This document shows, piece by piece, positions 1,426-31,409 of a stretch of DNA of 64,000 bases (position 1 is the stretch's first letter; each line of letters begins with the position of its first letter). The DNA is taken from sequence record MN047793.1. The stretch is one strand, 5' to 3'. The translations under genes and the position numbers were made by a program. The notes beneath the pieces are model-generated. The model made no database searches, was not told the DNA's origin, and saw only the letters and a list, made by a program, of their open reading frames with translations.

Positions 1426-4400
1426 ATGCTACATCTTCTTCTGAATTAAGGATGGTAGAGAACCCATTCCTTAATTCAATTTCAAGTCTGCTATCGAACA
1501 TGTTACTTACTTCATCACGGTGTGAGATAACAAACATACTTAACTTGTTCTCAATACCAATAGCCTTGATCATCTTCGCCGCAAGGGATACTCCGACGTT
1601 ACCAAGACCCACGTCTAGGCACTCATCAAGGATACAGAGGTTGATACGTCCGAAACGTGACTGGAGTACGTCACGGAACGCGAACGCAAGGCATAGATTC
1701 ACACGGGCCTTCTGACCCGCAGAGAAATTACCATACTCATAAGGCTCAGAGAACTGAGAAATAGACACGTCCATTTGTTCAGTAAACTGAATTTTGTGAG
1801 GCAGTCCAATCTTATCCAAATTATAGCGGAGCCTACTGTTCAACAGGGGGATGCTCTTGTTAAGTAAGGCTTTACGTACAAATGAATCTTTTTTGGTCAA
1901 CAACTTCAGCAAGAAGTCTTGATGCTTAATCTTCTTATCTAGAACGTTAACGCGATCATGGTCTGCTGCTTCCAGCACCGTTTCCTTTAACGAATCGACT
2001 ACGGATGTAAACGGATTGGTTTCAGATACAATCTCACTATGCCTATTTTTTAGGGTTTCGATACGGACAGTATGCCCTTGAATATCTGCAAGGGATTTGA
2101 ATGCCGAATTGATAAATTCCTTAGCCATAGGCATCTTACTACGAATAGTATCTGCCTTGGCCTTAATTACAGCAAGACTCTCTACAATATCCTCTTCTGA
2201 AAGGTCATCTTCATTCGGTACATATGGGTTTGTAGCCTTCTGTGCCATATCAAGTTGATTGACGTATACCTCAAGGTTAGTTTCTAATTGGTCAAGATTA
2301 TCTGGAATATCAAATTGATTTAATTCGATTAAACGAGGGGTAATTTTATTAGTGTAAGTATCATTAACTTGGTCTAATTCACTTTCAATAGCAGAAATAT
2401 CTGCGGAAAGTTCCGCAATATCTTCCTCTAGAGTTGATACTGAATGGTTACATTCTGCAATTTTAGTCTTCGCTTCATTGAACTGTTGCTGACAGTAAGG
2501 GCATAGATTATCTCCAAGTTTGGCAATTTCATCCAGCTTCTTAGCCTTTTCCACGTTCTTTGTAGATAATGATGTGGTAGCACTCATAAGACGGTCTGTC
2601 AGACCGTTGATGCGAACCTTCTCTAACTTGGACTTTGCGGTTAGGTCCACCAACTCGTCACGCACTGCACGTAGACCAGCAAAATCAATACTCTTGATTT
2701 TGGCAATCTCTTTATTCAAAGAATCAATCGTTTTAGCAGTTGTAACTTCCCATGCTTCAAATTTAGAAGCATTTGTTCGAATATTACTCAATTCAGACTG
2801 AAGGGCTGGTACATCTTTTTCGACTTTCGTTAACTCCTTTTCTAAGCGAGCTACTTCTTCAAACCCTTCGATAGAATTTTGAACATCAATGGCCTCAAGG
2901 TCGTTAATTTGTTTAACGATGGTCTCTACACGAGAGTCCCTTGATGCATTCCACTCTTCCATACGCGCAATATTGGTATTGACTTGCGTGTCATGTCTAG
3001 CATGCTCTGCTTCTAGTTTGGTATTGATTTCGACCAAGTTCTTAAATTCAGCCTTAGATGCAGCAAGCTCAGTCTTCAATAGTTCTGCCTTGACCGTTAA
3101 CTCTGTCAAACCGAATAATTCTTCAATGATATCTCGCTGATTCGCCTTACTTGCGTGCGAGGATGGCAGGCTAAGGAACGGTTCATGAGCCGCAGAGAAT
3201 ACAACAATACGGATAAACATGTCATACGGAATACCGATGATATTTTCAATCATTGCCGTGGCGTTTGCGACACTATCTGGCGTGATGTCATGGTCCTTCG
3301 TAAACTCTGGCTTATCATTATTACGGTATACGCGGACACCATCACCACCTAATGGGCGGTTCTTACGATAACGCTCAATCTTGTAATAGACTCCGTTCAC
3401 CACCATGGTAACCGTCAAGAGCATGTTTTTACCATTGCTCTTATTAATCTGTCCATTCAAATCTACATCCATCAAATTCTTACCGAATAGACATAGTAGA
3501 ATCGCATTTAGGATGGTTGATTTACCTGCACCATTGGAATCGATTTGACCATCTACTACTGAATCATAGTTCCTACCAATAATTAATGTAGGAGTCGTGA
3601 AGTCAAGGTTTACTTCCGTAGTATCAGAACCATAAGACAAATAGTTCTGCATAGTTGAAGAAATGAACCTGATATCAGAAGCCTTGGCCTGTAGGTCTTG
3701 CGAGGACTGAGCTAAGCCATTGTATAGACTTAGAACCAAATCAGTATCTACACTAGAATCTTTAATACGCTTAAGCAATTCAATAATTACTTCGTTCGTA
3801 GTTTCCAATTCTAGCTCTTCAATAGCAGCTTCATCATCCGTTAGGTTTACATCAATGGTAATCTTTTCGTCCAAACTGATTTCGCGAAGGTCAAACTTCG
3901 CTTGTAATGACGCACGAATTTGATTACTTTCTTCATAGGTAATATCAGTATCCACGTCAAGCTTGACGCGTGCACCCTTCGTTAGAAACTTCTTTGGATT
4001 TTCCAGGACTTCAGTTAACGGCATACGGAGATACTGAGGACCATTCGGCCAATCAATATAATCTAAATCATCATTAACAAAGTCATAAACCGCCATACCA
4101 CGCTTCTTATCATTTACGTCAGAGAAGTCCATACAAAATGGTGAACCGACGTAATGTACGTTACCTTGAGATTGGCGTTGGTGAAAGTGACCGCTGAAGA
4201 CTTTCTTTTGTTTTTTAAAGAACGTATGTGCTTCTGGTCCATGTTCCATAATATTACTAGAACCGGATACACGAAACCCCTTAAGTTCTAGATGCCCCAT
4301 TGCTACTGGGACTTTAGAATGTTCAATAAGTGTCGGGTACTCATCTTCACGGAGATATGGAATAGCTAATACCCCGCCATGAATAGTATCAATTATTTGA

Positions 4401-4756
4401 GTATCATTAATTAATACAATATTCTCAAATGGTTCAAAAATTTCAGTAGTGAAAGTTGTACGTGTATTACGGAACGCTAGGTCATGATTTCCAGTAATCC
4501 ACATGATGGGAAGACCTAAATCATTAAGTAACTTAGCGCCAGTATATGATCGTTGTAATGTAAAGGCATTGATTGCTGCACGGTGTTCATGCCAGTCACC
4601 TAAGAACCAAACATGGTCAATAGTTGGGTCTTCTTTTACTTTCTCACAGAACCATTCAATGAAATTTAAACAATCTTGATTATGTTCTTCAGAATTATTC
4701 TTCTTACCGAAATGGATGTCTGAAAAAATAGCAGCCTTTTTTAATTTATTACTCAT
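1424..4756 (-). CDS. Fused Mre11/SbcD nuclease - Rad50/SbcC ATPase (gp47-gp46 fusion)
   Basis: N-term SDIHFG, GDWHE, GNHD, GHL, SGHFH metallophosphoesterase motifs; then GAGKST Walker A, coiled coil with CPYC zinc hook, FSAGQ signature, ILDE Walker B, ISH H-loop; start at ATG 4756 (MSNKL) with AAGGGT RBS. Confidence 0.92.
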   Translation of the reverse strand: MSNKLKKAAIFSDIHFGKKNNSEEHNQDCLNFIEWFCEKVKEDPTIDHVWFLGDWHEHRAAINAFTLQRSYTGAKLLNDLGLPIMWITGNHDLAFRNTRTTFTTEIFEPFENIVLINDTQIIDTIHGGVLAIPYLREDEYPTLIEHSKVPVAMGHLELKGFRVSGSSNIMEHGPEAHTFFKKQKKVFSGHFHQRQSQGNVHYVGSPFCMDFSDVNDKKRGMAVYDFVNDDLDYIDWPNGPQYLRMPLTEVLENPKKFLTKGARVKLDVDTDITYEESNQIRASLQAKFDLREISLDEKITIDVNLTDDEAAIEELELETTNEVIIELLKRIKDSSVDTDLVLSLYNGLAQSSQDLQAKASDIRFISSTMQNYLSYGSDTTEVNLDFTTPTLIIGRNYDSVVDGQIDSNGAGKSTILNAILLCLFGKNLMDVDLNGQINKSNGKNMLLTVTMVVNGVYYKIERYRKNRPLGGDGVRVYRNNDKPEFTKDHDITPDSVANATAMIENIIGIPYDMFIRIVVFSAAHEPFLSLPSSHASKANQRDIIEELFGLTELTVKAELLKTELAASKAEFKNLVEINTKLEAEHARHDTQVNTNIARMEEWNASRDSRVETIVKQINDLEAIDVQNSIEGFEEVARLEKELTKVEKDVPALQSELSNIRTNASKFEAWEVTTAKTIDSLNKEIAKIKSIDFAGLRAVRDELVDLTAKSKLEKVRINGLTDRLMSATTSLSTKNVEKAKKLDEIAKLGDNLCPYCQQQFNEAKTKIAECNHSVSTLEEDIAELSADISAIESELDQVNDTYTNKITPRLIELNQFDIPDNLDQLETNLEVYVNQLDMAQKATNPYVPNEDDLSEEDIVESLAVIKAKADTIRSKMPMAKEFINSAFKSLADIQGHTVRIETLKNRHSEIVSETNPFTSVVDSLKETVLEAADHDRVNVLDKKIKHQDFLLKLLTKKDSFVRKALLNKSIPLLNSRLRYNLDKIGLPHKIQFTEQMDVSISQFSEPYEYGNFSAGQKARVNLCLAFAFRDVLQSRFGRINLCILDECLDVGLGNVGVSLAAKMIKAIGIENKLSMFVISHRDEVSNMFDSRLEIELRNGFSTILNSEEDVA

Positions 4757-4768
4757 TTGTTTTACCCT

Positions 4769-4776
4769 TATAAATA
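4769..4776 (+). promoter_or_regulatory. Late promoter TATAAATA
   Basis: Exact T4 late consensus upstream of GIY-YIG gene. Confidence 0.7.
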
Positions 4777-4797
4777 TCACTAGAACCCACTTTCCTA

Positions 4798-5589
4798 ATG
4801 GATTTTATGACAAACAAATACTACGTGTATGCTTACCTAGATCCACGCAAAATCAGCACAGATTATAGATTTACTAATGAACCATTCTACATTGGTAGAG
4901 GATCAGATGCAAGACTTAATTATCATATAAATGAAGTACGTAAACTTCCTGATATCATCACTAGAGAAATGTTTACTAAACATAGACTAAACATGATAAA
5001 GATAAACAAAATACGTTCTATTTTGGATGATGGATATGAACCCGTTATAATCAAGCTATATGAAAATTTATCAATGGAAGACTCTAAAGAATATGAAAAG
5101 AAACTTATAGCTGAAATTGGTCGTTCAGTGTTTGGTGAAGGTCCATTAACCAATTTAACTGAAGGTGGTGAAGGCAGACATATCGTGCATGCTGGAAGAT
5201 TTAATCCGTTTTATGGCAAACGTCATTCTGATGAATTCCGTAAACAGATGTCGGTTCTTCATTCTGGAAAAGAAATCTCTGCGGAGCATAGAGCTACAAT
5301 TTCTTCAAAATTAAAGGGTGTACCTAAGTCTAGGATAACCGTAGAATGTCGTAGAACATACATGCGAAAGTTGCATAATGACGACCCCACTAATCCTATG
5401 TTTACACGGCTAGGTGAACGAAATAGTAAAACGTGGTGCATTACGAGTCCGACAGGTCAAGTTATACATGTAACATCTTTGCGTAAATTTTGTATAGAAA
5501 ACAATCTTAAGGTTAAAACATTGATGTCTGCCTACAACAAGAAACGTGCCACTCGTGATGGATGGCACGTTTCTTTAATTTCTATGTAA
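4798..5589 (+). CDS. Free-standing GIY-YIG homing endonuclease (Seg-like) with NUMOD3 motifs
   Basis: YYVYAY...FYIGRG..R, E and NLTEGGEG motifs; NPFYGKRHSDE NUMOD3 repeat. Confidence 0.85.
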   Translation: MDFMTNKYYVYAYLDPRKISTDYRFTNEPFYIGRGSDARLNYHINEVRKLPDIITREMFTKHRLNMIKINKIRSILDDGYEPVIIKLYENLSMEDSKEYEKKLIAEIGRSVFGEGPLTNLTEGGEGRHIVHAGRFNPFYGKRHSDEFRKQMSVLHSGKEISAEHRATISSKLKGVPKSRITVECRRTYMRKLHNDDPTNPMFTRLGERNSKTWCITSPTGQVIHVTSLRKFCIENNLKVKTLMSAYNKKRATRDGWHVSLISM

Positions 5590-9484: not shown

Positions 9485-10228
9485 TTATTTATCCAACGGC
9501 TTCGGACCCTTGATGATTTCGTAGAGAGTCTTCGCATCATTAATATCTTCAATAGGTTTTGGTATAGATTTCATCTCAAGTATTTCTTCAGAATGACCAC
9601 GAATGAAATTAACCCATTTGTCATCTTTAAGTCCCGAATGATCGAGTAATGCTTGATAAATTTGAGGTTTTTTGAATGAACCACCAGCAATACCATCCGC
9701 GTTACGATATTCAACCTTCTTACCTTTGATAATAGGTGGATACACCATAGCTGCTGCTTGTTGTTTAACTTCGGTAGGTTGAAGGATTGATAATTTAGCG
9801 TAATACCAGTCAACGTTTAAGGGGAGCCACTGATTCAACGTATGACGTAATGTTGTACCGAATGTGACTAAATCGATTAAAGGACCGGCTGCGGAAGAAT
9901 AACTATAACCTTCGATAGCGATATGCCAATGTCTGTCGATCTTAGAAACGACATTGGATCGTTCGTTCGCGATAATATCAGTTTTTATATCGTTCGCGAT
10001 AGCGGTATATTGTAGGAATTTAAGAATTTCTAAATTGCTATGACTATCAGTTTTAGGAATATCTGGATATACACGGATGGTAACTCCTTGATCTTCGCAT
10101 TCTTTAAACCAACGTTTAAGTTCACCTTTTTTAGTATGTGCGACGCCTTCCGTAGTGTATACGTACTTGACATCATTTACTACCATGGCGGTACAACTTA
10201 AGGATGGGTCAATAGCAACAAAATTCAT
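9485..10228 (-). CDS. RuvC-like Holliday junction resolvase (RNase H fold)
   Basis: VAIDPSLSCTA, IAIEGYSY, and EDINDA acidic catalytic motifs. Confidence 0.75.
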   Translation of the reverse strand: MNFVAIDPSLSCTAMVVNDVKYVYTTEGVAHTKKGELKRWFKECEDQGVTIRVYPDIPKTDSHSNLEILKFLQYTAIANDIKTDIIANERSNVVSKIDRHWHIAIEGYSYSSAAGPLIDLVTFGTTLRHTLNQWLPLNVDWYYAKLSILQPTEVKQQAAAMVYPPIIKGKKVEYRNADGIAGGSFKKPQIYQALLDHSGLKDDKWVNFIRGHSEEILEMKSIPKPIEDINDAKTLYEIIKGPKPLDK

Positions 10229-10473
10229 TAGTAAATCCTTGGAACATTAGGAGGCTTAGCGGCCTCATCTTTCAATCGTTTTTCAATAAATGCGTAAGCA
10301 CGTTGTCTTTCATGAAAAGTAGTTTCGAATACATCTTCGTACTGAATACCACCTCTCATAAACCATGATAATTCCCAGGCTTCATCTACAATCTTTGTTC
10401 TGGAATCCATCAAATCCCGATAAACTTTAGCTATTAAGGCTGAGTCTTTGGACTTGATGGCCGAATAAAAAAA
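10228..10473 (-). CDS. gp51-like baseplate/tail assembly chaperone ORF, probably reached by -1 frameshift from the upstream gene
   Basis: LSWFMRGGIQYEDV..ER motif; frame is open back to the T7 run at 10467-10473. Confidence 0.6.
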   Translation of the reverse strand, partial: FFYSAIKSKDSALIAKVYRDLMDSRTKIVDEAWELSWFMRGGIQYEDVFETTFHERQRAYAFIEKRLKDEAAKPPNVPRIY

Positions 10474-11318
10474 GCGGTAGGATTCAATTCTGTGGATAGT
10501 TCATTTACGTGACCGCATTTAGTACATGCTACCTTATAGTTAAATGATGGACCCCAATCCTGAATATCCTTAATCTTGTCCATGATTAATTGAGTATCTG
10601 CACGAGGAAGAGTATCTAACCATTCTCGGATAAACTCTCTATTTTCTTTAGTATCATTTCTTATCGCATCTACTGATTCAATAATTGCGAGCACTGAATC
10701 TAGAATATATGTCCGTAATGTCTCCGGATCATTTAGTGACTCTGGACTGGTTTGCTGCATTATTAAGAATTCTTGAAACGTAATAGGTTTTAGTTTAACT
10801 GTTCGATTATCTGATTCTGTGAGAACAGTAAAGGTCGTCTCAATATCGCTAGGGTCAATTTCCTTAGATTCATTAGTGAAATATTCAAGTTGTACACGGG
10901 CTTCTTGCTCATGACCACAATTAGCAACATGTGTGATTTCATTCTTTCCCTTTCCTTTAACCGTAACTTCACCGCCTTTAGGATTTTGGCAAGTAAACTT
11001 TACGTCAATATATGGACCGAATGAGATTCGGCGAAGGTGGGTTAGAATAAAGTCAACGTCCGCAGTTAATAAGTCTAGAGGACGTTTGATTTGCTGCCCA
11101 CAGCGACGGAACACCGTGTCGATAGCTGTCCCTTGGAATAGCATATCAGGGGATTTCATCATGATTTCATCGGTCATGGTCATTGGGTGAAGAATGATTT
11201 CGCCATTGACGACATCATCGGCCAGTTCACCGTTTTTATAGAACATACCTAATGACGGGAGACGAATGGTCTCTCCAGGCATTTTATTAAGACGTGACAG
11301 TAATGGATTGGTGGACAT
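10434..11318 (-). CDS. gp26-like baseplate hub / tail assembly chaperone
   Basis: NPLL..., IRLPSLGMFY, MTMTDEIMMKSPDMLFQG, DVDFIL..LRRISFG, CxxxC...C and CTKCGH Zn motifs; late promoter CTAAATA 11347-11353. Confidence 0.7.
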   Translation of the reverse strand: MSTNPLLSRLNKMPGETIRLPSLGMFYKNGELADDVVNGEIILHPMTMTDEIMMKSPDMLFQGTAIDTVFRRCGQQIKRPLDLLTADVDFILTHLRRISFGPYIDVKFTCQNPKGGEVTVKGKGKNEITHVANCGHEQEARVQLEYFTNESKEIDPSDIETTFTVLTESDNRTVKLKPITFQEFLIMQQTSPESLNDPETLRTYILDSVLAIIESVDAIRNDTKENREFIREWLDTLPRADTQLIMDKIKDIQDWGPSFNYKVACTKCGHVNELSTELNPTAFFIRPSSPKTQP

Positions 11319-21590: not shown

Positions 21591-24500
21591 GTGGCTGATA
21601 AAAACTCAGATTACAAAAAGAAGCATTTGAACTTAAATGACTTCCTCCCGGCAACTAACCGGGGCGAGTTTATGGATTCATTAAATAAGAATCTATTTAA
21701 TCGTTATCTGACGAAAGATGAATTTGACCATATTGTAGGTATCATTGGTGATGCTGATCCTAATGATAAAATTAACAAGCAAATTACTGAGCGATCATCA
21801 TTCCGTCAAGCGAATCAACTACAGCCAGTAGTTTCAAAGAAGATCGGTTCAATTAATCACTTCATGAGTTTTGAAGACTTTATGACCCGCATTGGTCGTA
21901 CCGGTGTTGATACTGATAAATTTGATGAATGGGGTAATGCCCTTCAATTCAACTGGGTACCACCTATCGATATGGATAAGATGGTAAACTATCGTGATTA
22001 TTACTGGGACAGCCTAGTTAATCGTGACCACTCAATTCCACAATACATCACTATTAAGAGTCAGCAGAATTGGTCAGCAGCACGTTTTCGACAATCACTG
22101 AAGACATTAGTCGATGTGGTAGGATTAACCAATGTAGCATCTGCTAATGCTAGTCAGAAAAAAATTGCTATTGCTGGTAATCTAGTAGATACATTTAGGG
22201 CTGGTGAGCACTTTGTACTGTCACAAGCTGACGGTTCATTGGACTTACTATCAATCCGTAACGTTACGCTGAACGTGGCTACTGGTAATACTGAACTAGA
22301 AACCAATGAAGCGTTTTCAACATCTACTCCACTAACTGCATACCTTACTCGTGCCGACATTTCAGTTACCAGTATCTCAGGTAATAAAGTCACTGTGTCT
22401 GGTGACTTTAGTAATCTACTGATTAAGGATTACGTTATTGGCATCAATACATCAGCTTTAAAGCTGATGGAAATCGAAAGTAGTTCATTTGATGCTCTTA
22501 CTAACGTAACCACCATTACTGTAGCTGGATTGAATCAGAATAATTTTACTAAAATCTCTCTATTTCCGACAGTATCATTAATGCAGGCTGAAGCAGAGGT
22601 GTCAGTAAACCCGACATCAATTCTTCCCCAAGGTCAATGGAGTAATGATACCATTGGTAAACTTCTATGGTATTCCAATACTGAACTACTAAATGGTTCG
22701 ACGGGACGTACGGTATTCGGATCAACATTACTTGAAGATATTACTAAAGATTTCACAGCATTTGGTATTCAGACTAGCGATCTATTAGAAATTGCTGAAG
22801 GTAATAAAGGTTCGGGACTGTATTCAGTTGCAGCAGTATCACCAACACAAATTTTCACCAACAACCAATTCTTCTCTGCACAAAACATTTCGTATCGTGT
22901 TATTCGACCGTTTTCTGTTGAAAGCATTTCATCAACTGTGTCCCCAGGAAACGTATCACCTAACGCACTGTGGTTTAATCCTACTAATGATTCTCTATAC
23001 CAATGGAATGGTTCCACATGGAACATCGTATTAGTAGGATTATCATTACTCAAAACCCTGATTAGTGACCGTAAGGTAGTTAACTACAGTAATAAAAACG
23101 ACTGGACTGCGGATAATCATTGGGTACACCGTTCACAAATTACCGAATATACTGGAATGATTCGTGCACAAATGCCGATCATTGAGTACTTCCCGTACAT
23201 TGAGTTATCAGAAACTTCATATTCTACTAAATTATGGAGGTACCGTAAGGATGTAAATTCAACCTATCTAACCTCATCTACTCCACCAAAATTAGTTGAA
23301 CTGTTTAATTTCCGTTACTCTGGAAATGAATTTGCGTTCACCGACCTACGTACGATGGTATTCCATAATAAGTACGGCAATTTTGTGTCAGAGCTTAAAG
23401 CTGGTGACGTAATGCGGTTATCTGGATTTACCCAGAACGACGGACTATACACCGTCAAATCAGTATCATTCGCTCAACCTTCGCAAAATGCACGAGCGGT
23501 TTCTACTATCGAATTTGATAACCCAATCATTGCTACTAATGATCTACCTATCGGAGCAACATTTGCGCCAGAGTTAACAGCAAATGGTGATAAATTCACT
23601 GGACTATCAAGTAAACATTGGGAATTCGGCGGAATCACTGATATTAGTGCTTCAAGCCTACTACCAGAAAAGAATCCAATGTTGGACATCAATGTTGGAA
23701 CGGTAACCTCTAACGGTTTCGAAAGCATCATCGGTCTATACTCACAGACTTACTCTTCACAGGGTAACGTGTTAGTTGAACCTACTCTATTCTTTGATAA
23801 CAGTTTACATGATCTTGTACTGTACGATGATTACCAAGAAGGTGATATCCGTGTATACGTCAACGGAGAGCGCTTGTACGGGGCATTTGAGGACTTCGCG
23901 TCTAATATCAACCCAGACTACGTGGGTGGCATCAGATTCATCAATGGCTACACTGTACGCTCTACTGACGTTATTCGTATCGAGCTTGGTGAGTATGCAT
24001 TGGCTGATATCGGTCTACGTGCGGTTGAAGTTAACACTGCATCTGGCCCAGTACTTTATAATTTAACTAATATCAGAAAAATTGAACAACGCAAGGGTGA
24101 AGGAAACCAATACCCATATTTTGCGCTTCGTGATATTTTTGGCAAGAGACTAAATCTTGCGACTTCAATTTTCCGCTTCTTGGAAAGTGATACCTCACCA
24201 GTTAACTCGAATACTCTAAAGCGTATTGTATCGACTGGTGATGGTACCGATTATTCATTTGTACAGGAGCTAAAGAATCCACAAACTGGACAACTATATT
24301 GTTACTACGATTTCCAGCAAATTGGTGATGAGTTACAAACTATCTGGAAGCGAGGAACATACAGTGAACAGTATGTTCCTCTCAAGATTGATGGTCAGTG
24401 GGAAATGCCTAATCAGTGGTACTATAACGTATCACATGACAATTATACCGAAGTAAAGCTTACAGAAATCTTCCGCCACTTTAAATCAATCATTGATGTA

Positions 24501-27500
24501 CAAAGTCAACCGGGATTATTCAGTAAAACTTCTGGACTATTTTTCCTTGACGACCAAATCAATTATGGTATTGGTGGTACTATTAAAGAACATAATGATG
24601 GATTCGACTCATTAGTTTCTTCAATTCTTGTTGAAAATGGTAATCCAGTAACGGTAATCGAATTCGCTAAGAACCAGTATGATAATCAGCTACGCTATAT
24701 CAAAGAACGTTTCTATCAAGAAGCGGCTTCCCTATTCCTAGCAGATGAAACTGTTATTACTGCAAACGATCTACAGTCATTTATCACTGATTCTCTAATA
24801 AATTACGTAGAGAACAACGGTAAATTCGACCAGTGGTTTGGTGACTCTACGTCATACAACCCAACAACTAAGCTAGGGGTTCGTAATTGGATTGCCTCAT
24901 TGCCTCAGTTTGGACTAGAAGCGCGGCAACGTCCTTATATCGTTAAGGATTCTGACCAGAACTTATACGAAGTACATTGCCACGATGGTCATGTAGTAAA
25001 TGTCGCCTTCACTCCTGCGATGAATGAGCAGTTATTACGCCGTGCAGTTGGTAAGTCGCCGTCAATCACACAATTAGTGACTAATGAAAACGTACCGTTC
25101 CCGACCACAGTAAATGGTAATCAGCTTTCTATTGGTACATATCTAATCCGTACAAACACGGTTGCTAAGACACGTAAACTATATCGTGCTACTCAACTCG
25201 GTGTATGGCAAGAGTTAGATTTAAATAGTATATTCGCAAATGCAGTTCTAGAATTAGAAACCCGTCTATACAATACATTAGATGTTAATACTGATGCTAT
25301 TAATTTCAAATCAGTATATGATTTCAGTAAGGTAGAATCTAATAGTGGATATTCTTCATTAATGGAAGAACAGTTCCAGGCATATGCAGTAACAGAAGGT
25401 ATTGACTCTCCTCTAGTTAATACGTCACGTTTCCGACAGAATAATCCATTTACATGGAATTATTATCATTCTCCAATTAAAAATGATCCATTAACTGGAA
25501 ATATTTCTTATAACACTGCCGGCACATGGCAGGCATTGTATGAAAATGTTTACGGTACAGCATACCCACATCTTGAGCCATGGAAACTTCAAGGTTATGT
25601 CAATAAGCCAACATGGTGGGATACTGAATATGCTGATATAACAGGTCTTCGCCGTTGGAAAATCGTAATGTGGGCTAACGTGTTCAATGGTATCGTTCCT
25701 ACCAGTGGAACTACTCCAGCAGGGAACCCAGGAACAAGCGTCCCAGGACAAATTACTAATCGTTTTTCATATCTTCCAGTAAACGTGTCAGGCACGACAA
25801 CTGACGATGGCTATGCCCCAGACGATATTCTTCCACCATATTGGAACAGTATTAACACCAGCGATACTCGCGTGCGTGGATTATATGATCCAAACTTTGG
25901 TGAGTTTGTCACCACCCCACAATTAAACTTCGAATTTGGACAAAATGGTTTAGTTGAATGGCAATGGAAGCAGTCCAATGCATATGCATATGATCGATTA
26001 ATTGTAGCATACAAACTTGACCCAATGCGATTCATGCATCAGACGTTTGGGGCAGAATATCAGGTAGTATCATGCCTACAAATTTCTAAAGAAACGGAGA
26101 AGGTGTTTAGCCATTCGGATATGATTTTCCATGGTGATTATCAAGACGATACTAATGACATTTACCGTGCTCATGGATTGAATCAATGGTACGTCCATTA
26201 CAACCGTTATAGCGGTTTTGATGGTGTTTCTTCAGAATTCCGTTCCCTATGGAAGGAATGGGAAACTGACCTTGCATATCTTGTTGGCGCTTTCTTAGAT
26301 ACTCCAAGTTTCCGTATCAATAGCGATTTCTTTGATATTACAACTAAAGATTATGAGATTGCCGTTAAGAAAACTAAGGGTATCCGTGACGTATGGTTGA
26401 ATTCATTAAATGCGACCGCAATAACAGTGCCTTCACAATATGCGAAACTTCGTGACCAAGGAATTGGCTGGACAGTAGAATTTGCTAATACTAATCCAGT
26501 ATCTCGTCCAATAGAATATTTTGCTACACAAAATTACTCCGTAAATTTAAATACTGGTACTAGTACATTCCGTACGTATTCATATCCGCTAAAGAGTGCA
26601 GACGTAACAGCTGCTAGAGGATATCAACAAGCGACGTTTAATAGTCCGGTAGCATTAAATTTATTGACCGGGTTATCTAACCAGACATACACTGCGAATA
26701 TTACATTCAATAATACTACAACGGTATCCCTAAGCATTGCTGGAACTACAGTTACTACATTCTCTGACCTAATTGATAATATTAACAATCAACTAGGAAC
26801 ATCGGGAGTTATGGTTATTGAAAATGGTAATTTAGTGGTATACAGCGGTAACTCTACTTCAAGTACTTCCGTAGAAATCGCCGACGGTAATTTGTTCAAC
26901 GCAATTACTGGATTTGTTTCATTCGAAGACCCTGCAACGACAAGTAATAAATTTGAGAAGGTATTCCGTATAGATGGTAATTTTTACGGAACGTTTGTGG
27001 ATGCAGGTAGTATAATCATTCGGAACGCTGGGGTATTCAATGGTACATATACTATCAGTAATGTGTACTATGATAGTGCAACATTCCAAACCTTAGTATT
27101 CGTTAATGAATCTGTTACTTTACCTACTACAGGAGCAGTTCCTGTAACTGGAGTAATTGAACCAGTTAATGCTAAGACTCTTCCTGATGAATGGACTACC
27201 GGAACAGTTGTTTATTTCAACACTACAGGATACTTACCAAATAATCTTGATGACGAACTACCATATTATCTGATTCGTGTAAACGCTCGCGAGTTCCGCG
27301 TAGCAGAAACGGCCGAGGCAGCAGAGAAGGGGATTGCCATCACTCCTTCAGGTAATGCTATGGGCGAAGTGTTCATCGGGAATATCCTAATGACATTTAA
27401 CGCTCTTGGTGGAACACTAACGGATTACAACTGGCGTCGTCACGCTGTAGACACTCGTTATGTTGAGAATTCTTCAACATTGAGTATTTCAGGAATCCAA

Positions 27501-30500
27501 CAAATGGTGGACTTCCTTACAGGCTTCGATGAGTACTCTCAGGCACAAGGCTTCCGCTACCGTAATGTAAATGGAGAGAATGCAGACCCAGTTACTGGCA
27601 GAAATAATGACTGGCAGACTGAAACTGAAAAATTCATTAATTGGCTATATGCTCTACGTAATTCGCAGCAAGAAACTATGTTGCGTTATGATGTAGTAGG
27701 AAATGCGTCGAACAATGCATTGGCAATGACATCCGGTTCCGTCCCTAATTGGGCAAATGGAACTGCGGTCGTATTACTACCACAAAATGGTTCAACTCTT
27801 CCGCCAGAATTCGATAATCCACTTTCTTCAACTGTTCCATATTACGTAATTCGTGTGGCTAATAATACTAATGAATTTAAATTAGCAGCAACGGCGTATG
27901 ATGCAGCAAAGGGTAATGCTATTACTTTAACTGGTAATGGTAGTGGCACCTTCCAAGTAATGGTTTATAAAGCTATTACAAAATTCCCATCATACGAGTT
28001 AAATCCATTCAAGAACTACATCTGGATCAACCATGAAACGGGTGTTCTAGCTAACGTGCTGGATGATGATTATACTGACCCAATGAGTGCATCAAGATTA
28101 TTTGATAATAATCTTCTAGAATTAAATGCACAAAATGTTCTAGTGTTCCGCGAGGATAAAGAAAGTCGAATCTCATTAACTGGAGATAGTATCACTAATA
28201 ATGAATCTGGTAAAACAAATTCATATATGGCAGGTATGCATCTATTCTTTGACGGATTTGAACATATGATTCGATTCGAAGATAGGTCAGTAGATAATTC
28301 ATTAATTTATGACTCTTTCTTTGGATTAAACACTCCACGATTCTACGTTGAATTTGATCGCCAACAAGATTTCACTTTACGTCCAAACGTAGGCGGATTC
28401 TTCATGAGCGGTAGTAGTCTCGTACAAAACTTTGAATCTACTGTAAATGATATGCGCTATTATTACGATAGTGTTAAGGCCCCTGAAGGTCGTGCAACTA
28501 CAGATTTAGTTCGTCAATCATTAGGTTATGATGGAGCCAAAGAGTATATGGATGATTTGAAAATCAATCCTAAAACTCAATTCCAGTTCTGGCAGGGTAT
28601 GATCCAGAATAAGGGTACTAATAAGGCTGTAACGGCATTCGTCAATCAAGATACATTTGACACCGCATTAGTTGATGAATTCTGGGCATATAAGGTTGCA
28701 GAATTTGGTGACAATAAAGAACGTAATCACATCGAAATGAAGTTACTACCAAGTGACGTTGTTAAGAATGAACTACGTGTAGAATTTATTGCACCAGAAA
28801 ATACTGCGGTAGACTCTACGTTTACCAGTGTCGCATTAACTGACCTATCTCGCTGGTGGAATCAACCTGACCAAATTCAGGCAATGTCACCTAATGAAGC
28901 ATTCTTCTTCAATGCAAAGGTAGTTAATTACATCGCAGATTTAGCTCCATGGATTAAGGTAGTGAATGGTAAGCGCATATTCCAATCACCATCATATTAC
29001 ATGGACGCAGTGGTTGTAACATATTTCAATCCATTAACCAAGAAGACTGTTACCTTAAACGAAGGACTTGAGTACAAATTCTTGAACGCAAAAATCATTG
29101 AATTTATGGTAGACCTCAACACTCTACCTACAGTTTCTATGAGTATGCTATCTTATGATTATGATTCTCAAAACCCCGCTAAGGTAATCGATAAAGATGC
29201 CGGACAAGTAGTGGCAACACTACCCATCTGGAACCCAGCTATGGGTCATTACTTCGATGCAGCATACTATGCAGTAGACTTACATCGTCCTACCGACCCG
29301 GCAATTTATACAAATTCACTGGATGGTTCAGATACTGGTAATGCTACTTGGAAGAATAACCATGTAGGAACTGTTTGGTTGGACAATAAGCTGGAGCAGT
29401 ACGTACCGTATTACGACAAGACTGTGTACCCATCAACCGGTGCCCGTATATCTCGTTGGGGTAAACTAGCACCGTGGGCAGAAATTAATCTATACCAATG
29501 GACGCGTACCCTTATCGCTCCGGAAGATTATGATGAAATCGCACGTCGTCAGTCTTATGACATGTCAATTGCTGATGCAGATAAAGAAACTGGTACAACA
29601 TACAAGCGTCTATATCTAAACAGTAATGCACTAGACCCGGAAACCTCTAACCTTGACCCATTCTGGGTAGAAGTTAAGGATACCCATTATGACTTCACAG
29701 CTGGATTAAGTGAAGATAGTATGAACAATACCTTGGGCGGTAAGGTTGTTGAAGTGTACATAAACGCCGTATATCGTGAAACCATTGAATTTGAAGATGG
29801 TAATGCTGTACGTGCATATTTCACTCAATTCAATTTCGGTGATTACTGTCATGTAATCGCACGTGCGGAAGTACCGACATCCGAGCAATTAGAAGCTGGG
29901 GTATATCGTTATTTCACTCCCCACACCATAGAAAAACGTTTTGATGTCAAGTCTGGACAGACATACAACGTTTACTATTATTGGGTAACAGATAAAAAGC
30001 AGCCACTTTCTGATTTAAACCCATCAGTGTCTTTATATTCAGCAAAACGTCAATTGACTGATATGTCAGAGCCGTATATAATCCTACAGGGTCTACGTAC
30101 ACCTGACTTCGGTTATGGTTTGATATTCGGTCACGTGTTCGATGAATTTGCCTTCAACCTACCATATCGTTATACCCAAATGGTAGCAAAGGGACTTCAT
30201 GGTACAGTAAAAGATAATAACCGTTCAATAATTCGCTTCACTCGTGACTTCACCCTACGTGACAAGTTAGACGCGGATTCCATCACGCCTAAGAACCGTC
30301 ATGAAGAATGGAAGCTATTCCGTGAGCAACAATTAGAGAAAGTCGATAGATACCTGTGGAATAAGATTACCGAAGCTCTTATTGGATTCCGTTTAAGTAC
30401 TGATTATAATTCTGCGAATACGAATAAACCAATTCCATCATTAAATAGAATCTTATTCGACCGTTTATACCAAGCTGATACTCAATATGGTTTAGGTGAT

Positions 30501-31409
30501 CAACAGGTATTCACCAATAAAGACCTATCGCGTGATACTATCATTTCCGTGCTGAGCAACCCAAATACTCAATTCGAATATGTGAATATCGAAGAGTTCT
30601 TGTCCCGTCATAACTTCGCAACTCCGGAAGATATTATTCAGGCAATGAATGAAATCTATGTAAACTTCTCAGTGTCTGAAGTTAATAAGATTTTCTTCGC
30701 AGTATTACATGATGCCATGAGTTTGAAGATGGAGCATGCAGAAATATTCAAGACATCATGGGTAGGACTCCAGATTTCTAAGAATGTAGTACCATCAATT
30801 GCTGTACCATACGATGAACTTCGTTTGGTTCCTGGCCCAGATTGTGCGACAACACCCCCCGCACCATCACCGACACCATCCCCAACAAGTACACCAAATC
30901 CGTCAACCACGCCTACACCGACACCCAGTCCCACACCATCAAATAATATTTGTGGTGGTGGAGTTAATGACAGAGTATTGGAAGAAAGTGAGGGACGCAT
31001 TACTGAAGATGGAGAATGTAGAACATTAGAGCCGAATGCTGTCCCGGTAACACCTACACCGACACCATCTCCTCGTGTTGCTGTTACTGTTGTAGGTGTC
31101 ATCACAATCGATTCGGAAGGTGGTTACCATTTTGATATTGGTACATATTGTGGGTCAAGTCCTATAACTTCACTACAATTTTTGGGAGATAGTGAATTAA
31201 GTCAAGATGTCACATTAACATGTGGAGGAACCGCATTGCCAGGAATTTATTATGCATATAATAAGCCTGCGGCTACATTAATTGGTAATGAATGGTATAC
31301 TGCAAATATAGATTTTCCTCCAACAGCCGAACGCTATATTGTAAGAACCTTGATAAATGGTAATGAAACAATCTATCTCCGATTAGTTAACCCAAATTCA
31401 GAGGTATAA
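21591..31409 (+). CDS. Giant baseplate wedge protein (gp7-like, 3272 aa) with Thr/Pro-rich C-terminal linkers
   Basis: Follows gp6; FNWVPPIDMDKMVNYRDYYW, QFWQGMIQNKGT, DEFWAYKVAEFG motifs; late promoter ACTAAATA 21554-21561; GTG start. Confidence 0.7.
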   Translation: MADKNSDYKKKHLNLNDFLPATNRGEFMDSLNKNLFNRYLTKDEFDHIVGIIGDADPNDKINKQITERSSFRQANQLQPVVSKKIGSINHFMSFEDFMTRIGRTGVDTDKFDEWGNALQFNWVPPIDMDKMVNYRDYYWDSLVNRDHSIPQYITIKSQQNWSAARFRQSLKTLVDVVGLTNVASANASQKKIAIAGNLVDTFRAGEHFVLSQADGSLDLLSIRNVTLNVATGNTELETNEAFSTSTPLTAYLTRADISVTSISGNKVTVSGDFSNLLIKDYVIGINTSALKLMEIESSSFDALTNVTTITVAGLNQNNFTKISLFPTVSLMQAEAEVSVNPTSILPQGQWSNDTIGKLLWYSNTELLNGSTGRTVFGSTLLEDITKDFTAFGIQTSDLLEIAEGNKGSGLYSVAAVSPTQIFTNNQFFSAQNISYRVIRPFSVESISSTVSPGNVSPNALWFNPTNDSLYQWNGSTWNIVLVGLSLLKTLISDRKVVNYSNKNDWTADNHWVHRSQITEYTGMIRAQMPIIEYFPYIELSETSYSTKLWRYRKDVNSTYLTSSTPPKLVELFNFRYSGNEFAFTDLRTMVFHNKYGNFVSELKAGDVMRLSGFTQNDGLYTVKSVSFAQPSQNARAVSTIEFDNPIIATNDLPIGATFAPELTANGDKFTGLSSKHWEFGGITDISASSLLPEKNPMLDINVGTVTSNGFESIIGLYSQTYSSQGNVLVEPTLFFDNSLHDLVLYDDYQEGDIRVYVNGERLYGAFEDFASNINPDYVGGIRFINGYTVRSTDVIRIELGEYALADIGLRAVEVNTASGPVLYNLTNIRKIEQRKGEGNQYPYFALRDIFGKRLNLATSIFRFLESDTSPVNSNTLKRIVSTGDGTDYSFVQELKNPQTGQLYCYYDFQQIGDELQTIWKRGTYSEQYVPLKIDGQWEMPNQWYYNVSHDNYTEVKLTEIFRHFKSIIDVQSQPGLFSKTSGLFFLDDQINYGIGGTIKEHNDGFDSLVSSILVENGNPVTVIEFAKNQYDNQLRYIKERFYQEAASLFLADETVITANDLQSFITDSLINYVENNGKFDQWFGDSTSYNPTTKLGVRNWIASLPQFGLEARQRPYIVKDSDQNLYEVHCHDGHVVNVAFTPAMNEQLLRRAVGKSPSITQLVTNENVPFPTTVNGNQLSIGTYLIRTNTVAKTRKLYRATQLGVWQELDLNSIFANAVLELETRLYNTLDVNTDAINFKSVYDFSKVESNSGYSSLMEEQFQAYAVTEGIDSPLVNTSRFRQNNPFTWNYYHSPIKNDPLTGNISYNTAGTWQALYENVYGTAYPHLEPWKLQGYVNKPTWWDTEYADITGLRRWKIVMWANVFNGIVPTSGTTPAGNPGTSVPGQITNRFSYLPVNVSGTTTDDGYAPDDILPPYWNSINTSDTRVRGLYDPNFGEFVTTPQLNFEFGQNGLVEWQWKQSNAYAYDRLIVAYKLDPMRFMHQTFGAEYQVVSCLQISKETEKVFSHSDMIFHGDYQDDTNDIYRAHGLNQWYVHYNRYSGFDGVSSEFRSLWKEWETDLAYLVGAFLDTPSFRINSDFFDITTKDYEIAVKKTKGIRDVWLNSLNATAITVPSQYAKLRDQGIGWTVEFANTNPVSRPIEYFATQNYSVNLNTGTSTFRTYSYPLKSADVTAARGYQQATFNSPVALNLLTGLSNQTYTANITFNNTTTVSLSIAGTTVTTFSDLIDNINNQLGTSGVMVIENGNLVVYSGNSTSSTSVEIADGNLFNAITGFVSFEDPATTSNKFEKVFRIDGNFYGTFVDAGSIIIRNAGVFNGTYTISNVYYDSATFQTLVFVNESVTLPTTGAVPVTGVIEPVNAKTLPDEWTTGTVVYFNTTGYLPNNLDDELPYYLIRVNAREFRVAETAEAAEKGIAITPSGNAMGEVFIGNILMTFNALGGTLTDYNWRRHAVDTRYVENSSTLSISGIQQMVDFLTGFDEYSQAQGFRYRNVNGENADPVTGRNNDWQTETEKFINWLYALRNSQQETMLRYDVVGNASNNALAMTSGSVPNWANGTAVVLLPQNGSTLPPEFDNPLSSTVPYYVIRVANNTNEFKLAATAYDAAKGNAITLTGNGSGTFQVMVYKAITKFPSYELNPFKNYIWINHETGVLANVLDDDYTDPMSASRLFDNNLLELNAQNVLVFREDKESRISLTGDSITNNESGKTNSYMAGMHLFFDGFEHMIRFEDRSVDNSLIYDSFFGLNTPRFYVEFDRQQDFTLRPNVGGFFMSGSSLVQNFESTVNDMRYYYDSVKAPEGRATTDLVRQSLGYDGAKEYMDDLKINPKTQFQFWQGMIQNKGTNKAVTAFVNQDTFDTALVDEFWAYKVAEFGDNKERNHIEMKLLPSDVVKNELRVEFIAPENTAVDSTFTSVALTDLSRWWNQPDQIQAMSPNEAFFFNAKVVNYIADLAPWIKVVNGKRIFQSPSYYMDAVVVTYFNPLTKKTVTLNEGLEYKFLNAKIIEFMVDLNTLPTVSMSMLSYDYDSQNPAKVIDKDAGQVVATLPIWNPAMGHYFDAAYYAVDLHRPTDPAIYTNSLDGSDTGNATWKNNHVGTVWLDNKLEQYVPYYDKTVYPSTGARISRWGKLAPWAEINLYQWTRTLIAPEDYDEIARRQSYDMSIADADKETGTTYKRLYLNSNALDPETSNLDPFWVEVKDTHYDFTAGLSEDSMNNTLGGKVVEVYINAVYRETIEFEDGNAVRAYFTQFNFGDYCHVIARAEVPTSEQLEAGVYRYFTPHTIEKRFDVKSGQTYNVYYYWVTDKKQPLSDLNPSVSLYSAKRQLTDMSEPYIILQGLRTPDFGYGLIFGHVFDEFAFNLPYRYTQMVAKGLHGTVKDNNRSIIRFTRDFTLRDKLDADSITPKNRHEEWKLFREQQLEKVDRYLWNKITEALIGFRLSTDYNSANTNKPIPSLNRILFDRLYQADTQYGLGDQQVFTNKDLSRDTIISVLSNPNTQFEYVNIEEFLSRHNFATPEDIIQAMNEIYVNFSVSEVNKIFFAVLHDAMSLKMEHAEIFKTSWVGLQISKNVVPSIAVPYDELRLVPGPDCATTPPAPSPTPSPTSTPNPSTTPTPTPSPTPSNNICGGGVNDRVLEESEGRITEDGECRTLEPNAVPVTPTPTPSPRVAVTVVGVITIDSEGGYHFDIGTYCGSSPITSLQFLGDSELSQDVTLTCGGTALPGIYYAYNKPAATLIGNEWYTANIDFPPTAERYIVRTLINGNETIYLRLVNPNSEV
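30849..31073 (+). repeat. Pro/Thr/Ser-rich low-complexity repeats in the giant wedge protein
   Basis: TTPPAPSPTPSPTSTPNPSTTPTPTPSPTPS (30849-30941) and VPVTPTPTPSP (31041-31073). Confidence 0.9.

What the first reader, a model, noticed from the sequence alone, without database searches (positions are those of the whole stretch)
10228..10500. Predicted -1 programmed frameshift fusing gp26-like and gp51-like chaperones (gpG/gpGT-type)
Seen (minus strand): ...CCT ACC GCT TTT TTT ATT CGG... gives a T TTT TTT slippery heptamer (10467-10473), about 10 codons before the gp26-like stop. The -1 frame reads YSAIKSKDSALIAKVYRDLMDSRTKIVDEAWELSWFMRGG without a stop into the gp51-like ORF, whose own TTG/ATG start lacks a clear SD. 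Known: long-tailed phages make tail chaperones G and GT by a conserved -1 frameshift; T4 gp26 and gp51 are separate genes. Inference: this T4-superfamily phage keeps the G/GT arrangement, implying gp26/gp51 are the G/T equivalents.
Basis: partly seen in the sequence, partly recalled or inferred. Interest (0 to 1): 0.75.

Follow-up and report, generated by a model that had tools for sequence, protein, structure and literature searches.

The report
Conserved frameshift in phage hub-chaperone gene
A jumbo Xanthomonas phage makes a short and a long form of its T4 gp26/gp51-type baseplate-hub assembly protein from one gene, most likely by a programmed -1 ribosomal frameshift; the same signal is present in every checked relative that has one such gene, whereas T-even phages encode the two forms as separate genes 26 and 51.

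Summary
The window comes from Xanthomonas phage Xoo-sp13. On the minus strand, the 294-aa PF12322 (T4_baseplate) gene (11318..10434) carries an in-register T TTT TTT heptamer at 10473..10467. The -1 frame is open from there to 10228 (79 codons).

The signal is not chance:
- 46 distinct jumbo-type and T4-like relatives and 78 distinct cyanophage-type loci all keep T TTT TTY in register. They do so even in genomes that otherwise use TTC for Phe.
- All keep an open, homologous -1 ORF of 55-90 aa.
- Three further relatives keep only a U_UUU tetramer.
- A stable stem-loop follows 4-8 nt downstream. In the window it is 11 bp after a 6-nt spacer.
- Start codons for the downstream ORF are not conserved.

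The -1 domain is homologous to the C-terminal domain of T-even gp51 (Pfam Gp51_C). In T-even phages gp26 is the body alone and gp51 is the body plus Gp51_C in one frame, with no slippery site. So gp26 and gp51 correspond to the short and long products (G/GT-like, rather than G/T).

A tape-measure-chaperone function is plausible but unproven. No direct protein evidence exists, and I found no paper describing this frameshift.

The parts
10434..11318 (-). 0-frame ORF of the gp26/gp51-family hub assembly gene (294 aa; Xoosp13_288, annotated 'baseplate hub subunit'). This is the short product.
   Evidence: Matches Pfam PF12322 T4_baseplate at 1.3e-19 and PHROG150 positions 10-236 of 282 at 2.8e-25. 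The AF2 model has pLDDT 89.9. BFVD fold matches to baseplate hub assembly proteins reach E 1.7e-18.
10467..10473 (-). Slippery heptamer T TTT TTT (X XXY YYZ register) at the conserved C-terminal Phe-Phe.
   Evidence: Seen. It is conserved in register in 46 distinct jumbo and T4-like loci and in 78 distinct cyanophage-type loci. The preceding codon always ends in T, across 10 different codons for 9 amino acids.
10434..10466 (-). 0-frame tail after the heptamer: 10 codons plus a TAA stop.
   Evidence: Seen. In relatives this tail is 0-14 codons long and is not conserved in deep comparisons.
10407..10460 (-). Predicted stimulatory stem-loop. An 11-bp stem pairs 10460..10450 with 10417..10407, 6 nt after the heptamer. 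The 3' arm contains the annotated TTG/ATG start of the small ORF.
   Evidence: z-score -2.9; dG -20.8 against a locus mean of -8.7 (percentile 0.004). Across 45 loci the median percentile is 0.01; a consensus stem at the same columns in 7 clade members, with 2 pairs showing compensatory changes.
10228..10467 (-). -1 frame extension: 79 codons plus a stop. It is a Gp51_C-like helical domain and forms the C-terminal part of the long product.
   Evidence: the frame is open; homologues align from the first codon after the shift point; hhalign against cyanophage/KVP40 -1 ORFs plus the gp51 C-terminus gives E 1.5e-5 (prob 80%); against full gp51 it matches residues 222-250 at E 3.9e-4.
10228..10410 (-). 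Small ORF as annotated in GenBank (Xoosp13_287, 60 aa, hypothetical protein). It is the 3' three-quarters of the -1 extension.
   Evidence: annotation; no Pfam or PHROG hit; close homologues are called as 60-aa ORFs.
9485..10228 (-). Neighbouring RuvC-like gene. Its ATG overlaps the stop of the -1 ORF (TAATG).
   Evidence: PHROG159 at 2.7e-7. The same overlap occurs in XacN1.

Best explanation
Gene Xoosp13_288 encodes a non-structural baseplate-hub/tail assembly chaperone of the T4 gp26/gp51 family, and it is decoded in two ways.

- Most ribosomes read the 0 frame and terminate at 10434. This gives a 294-aa short form, equivalent to T4 gp26.
- A fraction slip back one base on U UUU UUU (10473..10467), with both Phe-tRNAs re-pairing. 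An 11-bp stem-loop starting 6 nt downstream helps the slip.
- Those ribosomes continue in the -1 frame to 10228. This adds a roughly 79-residue helical Gp51_C-like domain and gives a long form, equivalent to T4 gp51.

The separately annotated 60-aa ORF Xoosp13_287 is therefore mostly or wholly the 3' part of the long form.

The arrangement works like lambda G/GT: a fixed ratio of two proteins that share a body and differ by a C-terminal adaptor domain. Tevenvirinae, and at least one other lineage, replaced the frameshift with two paralogous genes.

Shown: the signals, their conservation, and the homologies. Inferred: that slippage is ribosomal, its efficiency, and the function of each form.
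For: Signal and register
- Heptamer in register; -1 frame open.
- All 9 jumbo-phage relatives at 21-62% identity have T TTT TTY at the same Phe-Phe and a 71-82-aa -1 ORF.
- C48C1, KVP40, ACP17 and S-SM2 do too.
- 41/41 IMG/VR loci and 78/78 distinct cyanophage-type loci do too.

Selection at the nucleotide level
- The preceding codon always ends in T, across 10 codons for 9 amino acids.
- The first Phe is always TTT, even where the rest of the gene uses TTC: ACP17 0 TTT/12 TTC, L024 0/9, L018 1/13.

Frameshift rather than independent initiation
- -1 ORFs align from the first codon after the shift point, with constant spacing to the conserved core.
- The 0-frame tail varies from 0 to 14 codons.
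- The -1 frame is open only a median of 5 codons upstream of the site.
- The first ATG lies beyond codon 25 or is absent in 26/46 loci.
- RsoM2USA, PA5oct and RaK2 have no annotated downstream ORF at all.
- Gene callers give the domain inconsistent, often truncated N-termini in 158 clusters.

Stimulatory structure
- The 60 nt downstream are unusually stable. Median percentile is 0.01, and 71% of loci fall in the lowest decile.
- A consensus stem is present in the clade.

The long form is a real protein
- T-even gp51 is PF12322 plus PF28602 Gp51_C in one frame; gp26 is PF12322 only.
- Cyanophage and KVP40 -1 ORFs hit PHROG634 'baseplate hub assembly catalyst' at 1.4e-28 and 5.9e-21.
- C48C1's -1 ORF against the gp51 C-terminus gives BLASTP 2e-7.
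- L063 carries tandem short and long paralogues with the jumbo-type domain in frame (A5 HMM 1.5e-19).
- T6 and Cronus gp26 lack the heptamer.

Copy number and location
- Xoo-sp13 has a single family member.
- The XacN1 orthologue and the RaK2 protein were not found in virions (PMC5852040).
- T4 gp26 and gp51 are listed as hub assembly chaperones (PMC3004832).
Against: - There is no direct protein, ribosome-profiling or transcript evidence for any member.
- In this phage the -1 ORF has an ATG at codon 20 with a weak GGGA upstream, so some independent initiation cannot be excluded.
- The window's own -1 ORF has no direct Pfam or PHROG hit. Its link to Gp51_C rests on profile-profile scores of moderate strength (prob 80% and 36%).
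- Three relatives have only a T5 run (xTT TTT A), so a full heptamer is not absolutely required.
- The stem-loop shows few compensatory changes, and its arms overlap conserved coding sequence.
- For the G/GT-like function, no Phage_TAC family hit was found.
- The Foldseek hit to the HK97 tail assembly chaperone is weak (E 0.18) and absent for the gp51 model.
- No tape-measure gene is adjacent in the window.
Confidence: 0.85

Rival explanations
1. The same fusion protein arises from transcriptional slippage. RNA polymerase would add one U on the T-run, so part of the mRNA carries the two frames in phase and no ribosomal slip is needed.
For: - The site is a homopolymer: T7 in the window, T8-T9 in C48C1, L018, L024, L025 and RsoM2USA.
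- A one-base insertion gives the same product as a -1 shift.
Against: - 34 of 45 distinct jumbo and T4-like genes and 78/78 cyanophage-type genes have only T6 followed by C. From general knowledge, that is short for polymerase slippage.
- What is conserved is the codon register of a heptamer plus a stem-loop 4-8 nt downstream. These are the hallmarks of ribosomal -1 frameshifting and are irrelevant to polymerase slippage.
Confidence: 0.08
2. There is no recoding. The small ORF is a separate gene, as annotated. It would be translated by its own initiation at the ATG at 10410 or by termination-reinitiation after the 0-frame stop at 10434.
For: - An ATG with a weak GGGA upstream lies 24 nt after the 0-frame stop.
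- GenBank and the gene callers annotate it this way.
- Some relatives have an ATG within the first 7 codons.
Against: - Start codons are not conserved. In 26/46 loci the first ATG falls inside the conserved core or is absent, and PA5oct has no Met at all.
- The -1 peptide is conserved from the shift point itself.
- The heptamer is kept against codon bias.
- The start lies in the 3' arm of an 11-bp stem.
- In T-evens and in L063 the domain is covalently part of the body.
Confidence: 0.05
3. It is an artefact or decay. Either a homopolymer sequencing error split one gene, or the gene is a frameshifted pseudogene.
For: Homopolymer runs are error-prone on some sequencing platforms.
Against: - The same -1 relation is found in more than 120 independently assembled genomes and contigs from different platforms and clades.
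- The 0-frame always terminates within 0-14 codons.
- Both frames remain under evident protein-level conservation.
- An essential assembly gene family would not be broken everywhere in the same way.
Confidence: 0.01

Closest known systems
Lambda gpG/gpGT and the conserved tail-assembly-chaperone frameshift of long-tailed phages (Levin 1993; Xu, Hendrix & Duda 2004; P2 E/E+E'), as summarised in PMC5009743
   Same: - A -1 shift on an X XXY YYZ heptamer occurs a few codons before the stop of an assembly-chaperone gene.
- The short and long products share the body, and the long form gains a small C-terminal domain.
- The products are absent from virions.
- The arrangement is conserved although the sequences diverge.
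   Different: - The protein family is different: PF12322 T4_baseplate plus Gp51_C, about 210-290 aa with Cys pairs, and no hit to Phage_TAC families.
- Fold similarity to the HK97 chaperone is weak and was not replicated.
- In Xoo-sp13 the gene is not directly upstream of a tape-measure gene.
- Binding to the tape measure or tube protein is untested.
T4/T6 gp26 and gp51 (hub assembly chaperones; PF12322 and PF12322+PF28602)
   Same: - They are homologous. The window's 0-frame protein corresponds to the gp26-type body.
- The body plus the -1 domain is colinear with gp51.
- They are non-structural or of uncertain presence in the particle.
   Different: - T-evens encode the two forms as two divergently transcribed paralogues.
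- T-evens have no slippery site: gp26 ends GAA TTC TTT ... and is followed by gene 25.
- Xoo-sp13 has one gene plus a frameshift.
E. coli dnaX tau/gamma -1 frameshift
   Same: A heptamer plus a downstream stem-loop sets a fixed ratio of two products from one bacterial-type gene.
   Different: - In dnaX the shifted product is the shorter one.
- dnaX uses A AAA AAG with an upstream SD-like stimulator. No SD-like element is seen upstream of the site here.
GenBank annotation of Citrobacter phage Moon gp27/gp28 as 'tape measure chaperone / GT-like fusion' (KM236240)
   Same: It is an earlier attempt to locate a G/GT-type frameshift pair in a T4-like phage, next to the gp29 tape measure.
   Different: - It concerns different genes (27/28), which are structural hub proteins.
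- It was not examined further here.

Membership tests
Programmed -1 ribosomal frameshift site | X XXY YYZ slippery heptamer in the 0-frame register | tested here: met
   T TTT TTT at 10473..10467. T TTT TTY is in register in 46+78 distinct relatives. Three relatives have only xTT TTT A.
Programmed -1 ribosomal frameshift site | Open -1 frame that overlaps the 0-frame end, encodes a conserved peptide from the shift point, and lacks a conserved start | tested here: met
Programmed -1 ribosomal frameshift site | Stimulatory RNA structure 5-9 nt downstream | tested here: met
   Prediction only. There is an 11-bp stem after a 6-nt spacer. Its percentile is 0.004 in the window and the median over 45 loci is 0.01. 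Covariation is limited: 2 of 10 pairs.
Programmed -1 ribosomal frameshift site | Frameshift product observed, and ribosomal rather than transcriptional origin | not testable with these tools
   No proteomic, Ribo-seq or RNA data were at hand. Virion MS of XacN1 and RaK2 did not detect the protein at all.
Lambda-type tail assembly chaperone G/GT | Sequence or fold membership in known TAC families | tested here: inconclusive
   No Pfam, PHROG or PDB sequence hit to TACs. Foldseek gives the HK97 TAC 2ob9 at prob 0.82, E 0.18 and TM 0.49-0.52 over 95 columns for the window model. That hit is absent for the gp51 model.
Lambda-type tail assembly chaperone G/GT | Gene lies immediately upstream of the tape-measure gene | tested here: not met
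   In the window the downstream genes are a RuvC-like gene and a hypothetical; the divergent neighbours are baseplate genes. In S-SM2 the next gene has weak tape-measure PHROG hits at 1.7e-5. In T-evens gene 51 heads the 51-27-28-29 cluster.
Lambda-type tail assembly chaperone G/GT | Short and long products share an N-terminal body through a -1 shift near the 3' end, and are absent from virions | tested here: met
   The arrangement is met at sequence level. Absence from virions is reported for XacN1 and RaK2 and for T4 gp51.
Lambda-type tail assembly chaperone G/GT | Body binds the tape measure and the C-domain binds the tube protein | not testable with these tools
   No interaction data were available.
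T4 gp26/gp51 family | PF12322 T4_baseplate body | tested here: met
   1.3e-19. PHROG150 at 2.8e-25. Cronus gp51 5.5e-56; Cronus gp26 PHROG150 9.1e-62.
T4 gp26/gp51 family | Gp51_C domain (PF28602) following the body | tested here: inconclusive
   PF28602 is not in the local Pfam copy. The window's -1 ORF has no direct hit. Profile-profile results: A5 vs A6 gives E 1.5e-5, prob 80%; A5 vs the gp51 alignment gives E 3.9e-4 at gp51 residues 222-250. For cyanophage and KVP40 -1 ORFs the link is strong, through PHROG634 at 1e-28 and 6e-21.

The most novel reading that the evidence does not exclude
The gp26/gp51 family is the T4-superfamily counterpart of the G/GT tape-measure chaperones. The ancestral state would be one gene decoded into a short and a long form by a -1 frameshift, as retained in jumbo Rak2/XacN1-like phages, KVP40-like phages and marine cyanomyophages. 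T-even phages, and independently at least one other lineage, would have replaced the frameshift by gene duplication into gene 26 (short) and gene 51 (long). This would give the long-enigmatic gp51 a defined role as the adaptor-bearing form. It would also extend the 'universal' tail-chaperone frameshift to a phage group thought to lack it.
Probability: 0.45. Interest if true: 0.85.

Novelty: new variant of a known kind. Interest (0 to 1): 0.75.

Why it matters
- **T4 and the G/GT frameshift.** The G/GT frameshift is one of the most conserved recoding events in tailed phages, yet no counterpart is known in T4 and its relatives. [quoted passage not shown]
- **A testable hypothesis for gp26 and gp51.** These results tie gp26 and gp51 together as the short and long forms of one ancestral gene. 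They show that most of the T4 superfamily outside the T-evens makes them by frameshifting. The hypothesis for their roles follows: a shared chaperone body, with or without an adaptor domain, at a set ratio.
- **Annotation.** Hundreds of deposited genomes annotate a truncated orphan ORF, sometimes named 'baseplate hub assembly catalyst', or nothing at all downstream of the hub gene. None of the 18 annotated records inspected marks a joined CDS at this gene.

Tried and rejected
Searches that found nothing
- Pfam and PHROG scans of the window's -1 ORF gave no hit.
- PDB sequence searches with profiles of the body and of the -1 domain gave nothing significant.
- Rfam over the site gave only a chance miRNA-like hairpin hit far below threshold.
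- Nine of the ten allowed literature searches (one of them rejected for a too-short term) and four papers read found no description of a gp26/gp51 frameshift.

Structural link to tail assembly chaperones
- Foldseek of the window model gave the HK97 tail assembly chaperone as the only high-probability PDB hit, but at E 0.18.
- The hit did not recur with the T-even gp51 model, so I do not count it as evidence of membership.

Technical dead ends
A narrower alignment (A4) worked.

Natural in-frame fusions among close homologues
- The 309-338-aa homologues (P0041, P0048, P0053 and others) all end shortly after the Phe-Phe. Their extra length comes from internal insertions.
- One true in-frame long form, P0279, came from the representative search.

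Synonymous-site comparison
- The 33-nt overlap between Xoo-sp13 and XacN1 has too few differences to discriminate between the frames.
Full report
**What the window is.** The window matches Xanthomonas phage Xoo-sp13 (MN047793.1, 309 kb jumbo myophage) at 100% identity. Record coordinate equals window coordinate plus 186000. On the minus strand:
- Xoosp13_288 ('baseplate hub subunit', 11318..10434, 294 aa) comes first.
- Xoosp13_287 (hypothetical, 60 aa, 10410..10228) follows it.
- A RuvC-like gene comes next (9485..10228).
- Divergently upstream lies a baseplate module: a virion protein, a gp53-like LysM protein, a 626-aa protein, a gp5-like hub/lysozyme, an M23 peptidase and a gp6-like wedge protein.

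**Observation.** The sequence reads ...GCT TTT TTT ATT..., with the T7 run at 10473..10467 starting at the third position of the Ala codon. This is the X XXY YYZ register.
- The 0 frame stops ten codons later (TAA, 10436..10434).
- The -1 frame is open for 79 codons from the heptamer to 10228. It is closed 11 codons upstream of the shift point.
- T7+/A7+ runs are depleted in this window: 7 seen against about 28 expected.

**Comparative test of the signal.** The hub protein is a PF12322 T4_baseplate / PHROG150 member.

I examined 46 distinct single-gene loci:
- nine jumbo phages at 21-62% identity: XacN1, RAS14, RsoM2USA, Atu_ph07, Phosso, PA5oct, RaK2, A4 and Xoo-sp13 itself;
- four T4-like phages of other clades: cyanophage-type C48C1 and S-SM2, KVP40 and ACP17;
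- 41 IMG/VR contigs (32 distinct genes) and one further contig, L059.

Results:
- All carry T TTT TTY in register at the conserved C-terminal Phe-Phe.
- The heptamer lies 0-14 codons before the stop.
- An open -1 frame of 55-90 codons follows.

A second scan gave 78 of 78 distinct cyanophage-type loci with T TTT TTC one codon before the stop.

Nucleotide-level selection:
- The codon before the Phe-Phe encodes nine different amino acids, but its third base is always T.
- The first Phe codon is always TTT, even in genes that otherwise avoid it (ACP17 0 TTT/12 TTC, L024 0/9, L018 1/13).

Three homologues whose proteins end in V-F or L-F instead of F-F have only xTT TTT A. That is a U_UUU tetramer in register. 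They still have the same open, homologous -1 ORF.

**Frameshift versus a separate gene.**
- The -1 ORFs align from their first codon, with constant spacing to a conserved core (a Y/F-x-R/x-G motif and a P-x-E-R motif).
- The 0-frame tails differ in length and sequence.
- The -1 frame opens a median of only 5 codons before the site.
- The first ATG lies beyond codon 25 or is missing in 26 of 46 loci.
- RsoM2USA, PA5oct and RaK2 have no annotated downstream ORF.
- A profile search of 1.84 billion representatives finds 158 clusters. Nearly all are 40-102-aa orphans with inconsistent N-termini. About 25 begin inside the domain.

In Xoo-sp13 itself an ATG at codon 20 with a weak GGGA exists, so some independent initiation cannot be excluded. 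That start lies in the 3' arm of the stem described next.

**RNA structure.** In the window an 11-bp stem (10460..10450 with 10417..10407) begins 6 nt after the heptamer.
- The downstream 60 nt fold at -20.8 kcal/mol against a locus mean of -8.7 (percentile 0.004).
- Over 45 loci the median percentile is 0.01, and 71% fall in the lowest decile. Stems start 4-8 nt after the site in most.
- Seven sequences of the Xoo-sp13 clade share the stem at the same columns, with two compensatory pairs.
- Rfam has nothing relevant.

**What the two parts are.** In Tevenvirinae (Cronus, T6, CkP1, Moon), genes 26 and 51 are divergent neighbours.
- gp26 (208 aa) is PF12322 only. It ends a few codons after its Phe-Phe, has no slippery site (GAA/GAG TTC TTT), and is followed directly by gene 25.
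- gp51 (249-250 aa) is PF12322 plus PF28602 'Gp51_C' in one frame.
- The two are paralogues (BLASTP 3e-14).

PHROG150 has 282 positions. gp51 covers 13-282, gp26 covers 15-235, the window's 0-frame protein covers 10-236, and the S-SM2 -1 ORF covers 240-281.

Links between the -1 ORFs and Gp51_C:
- Cyanophage and KVP40 -1 ORFs hit PHROG634 'baseplate hub assembly catalyst' at 1.4e-28 and 5.9e-21. gp51 also hits it, at 7e-25.
- C48C1's -1 ORF aligns to gp51 residues 207-250 (2e-7).
- The jumbo-type -1 domain matches the cyanophage/gp51 C-domain profile at E 1.5e-5 (prob 80%).
- The jumbo-type -1 domain matches gp51 residues 222-250 at 3.9e-4.

A contig from an unrelated assembly (L063) has tandem paralogues. 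One has no C-domain; the other has the jumbo-type domain in frame (HMM 1.5e-19).

So the long form exists as a natural single-frame protein in at least two lineages. Genomes with the heptamer have a single family member.

**Structure and function.**
- AF2 gives confident models: the window body at pLDDT 89.9 and T-even gp51 at 91.5. In gp51, residues 196-249 form four short helices.
- BFVD matches show the body fold in many myophage 'baseplate hub assembly' proteins.
- No solved structure matches significantly. The HK97 tail assembly chaperone is the only high-probability PDB hit for the window model (prob 0.82, E 0.18), and it is not seen with gp51.
- The XacN1 orthologue and the RaK2 protein were not detected in virions (PMC5852040).
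- T4 gp26 and gp51 are listed as hub assembly chaperones, and gp51 is absent from particles (PMC3004832).

I conclude that the proteins are assembly chaperones made in two forms. A tape-measure/tube adaptor role like G/GT is a reasonable inference but untested.

**Known or new.** The mechanism is the well-known tail-chaperone frameshift type (PMC5009743).
- I found no paper describing it for gp26/gp51 or for these phages.
- None of the 18 GenBank records inspected annotates a joined CDS at this gene.
- One record (Citrobacter phage Moon) instead labels gp27/gp28 as a GT-like pair.
- The library does not cover all journals, so prior description cannot be excluded.

**Verdict.**
- Confidence that a programmed recoding event yields a long form is about 0.9.
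- Confidence that the event is ribosomal -1 slippage is about 0.85.
- Confidence in a G/GT-like function is about 0.45.

Noticed in passing
window 10226..10230 (-); L002 about 4021..4027: The stop of the -1 ORF overlaps the ATG of the next gene (RuvC-like, 9485..10228) as TAATG. The same overlap occurs in XacN1. The downstream gene is therefore coupled to the -1 frame, not to the 0 frame.
   Followed up: partly
window about 10900..10990 (-), residues ~113-140 of the hub protein: There is an insertion of about 30 residues relative to XacN1, in the region of the first Cys pair. KVP40 has a longer insertion at the same place. The conserved Cys residues (one near residue 73, one at 110, and CxxC at 265/268) suggest a zinc site. 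One JGI homologue was auto-named 'phage FluMu protein Com'.
   Followed up: no
L060 (Citrobacter phage Moon KM236240) 3250..4888: The GenBank annotation calls gp27 'tape measure chaperone' and joins gp27 and gp28 as a 'GT-like fusion protein'. This is a different proposal for a G/GT pair in a T4-like phage.
   Followed up: no
L063 188..2196 (GCA_902386595.1 contig CABMJN010000146.1): There are tandem PF12322 paralogues of 338 aa and 331 aa. The 338-aa protein has no C-domain. The 331-aa protein has the jumbo-type C-domain in frame. This is a second natural two-gene solution besides T-even 26/51.
   Followed up: partly
window, whole: Homopolymer runs of T or A of 7 or more are about four-fold depleted: 7 are seen against about 28 expected from base composition. 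They lie at 179, 1396, 10467, 22158, 41623, 49232 and 54616.
   Followed up: no
window 21591..31409 (+): A very large ORF of 3272 aa with a GTG start lies next to the baseplate module. It was not analysed.
   Followed up: no
L056, L057, L058: Three homologues have V-F or L-F instead of F-F and only a T5 run (xTT TTT A). They keep the open, homologous -1 ORF. Possible explanations are single-tRNA slippage on U_UUU or a lower-efficiency site.
   Followed up: partly
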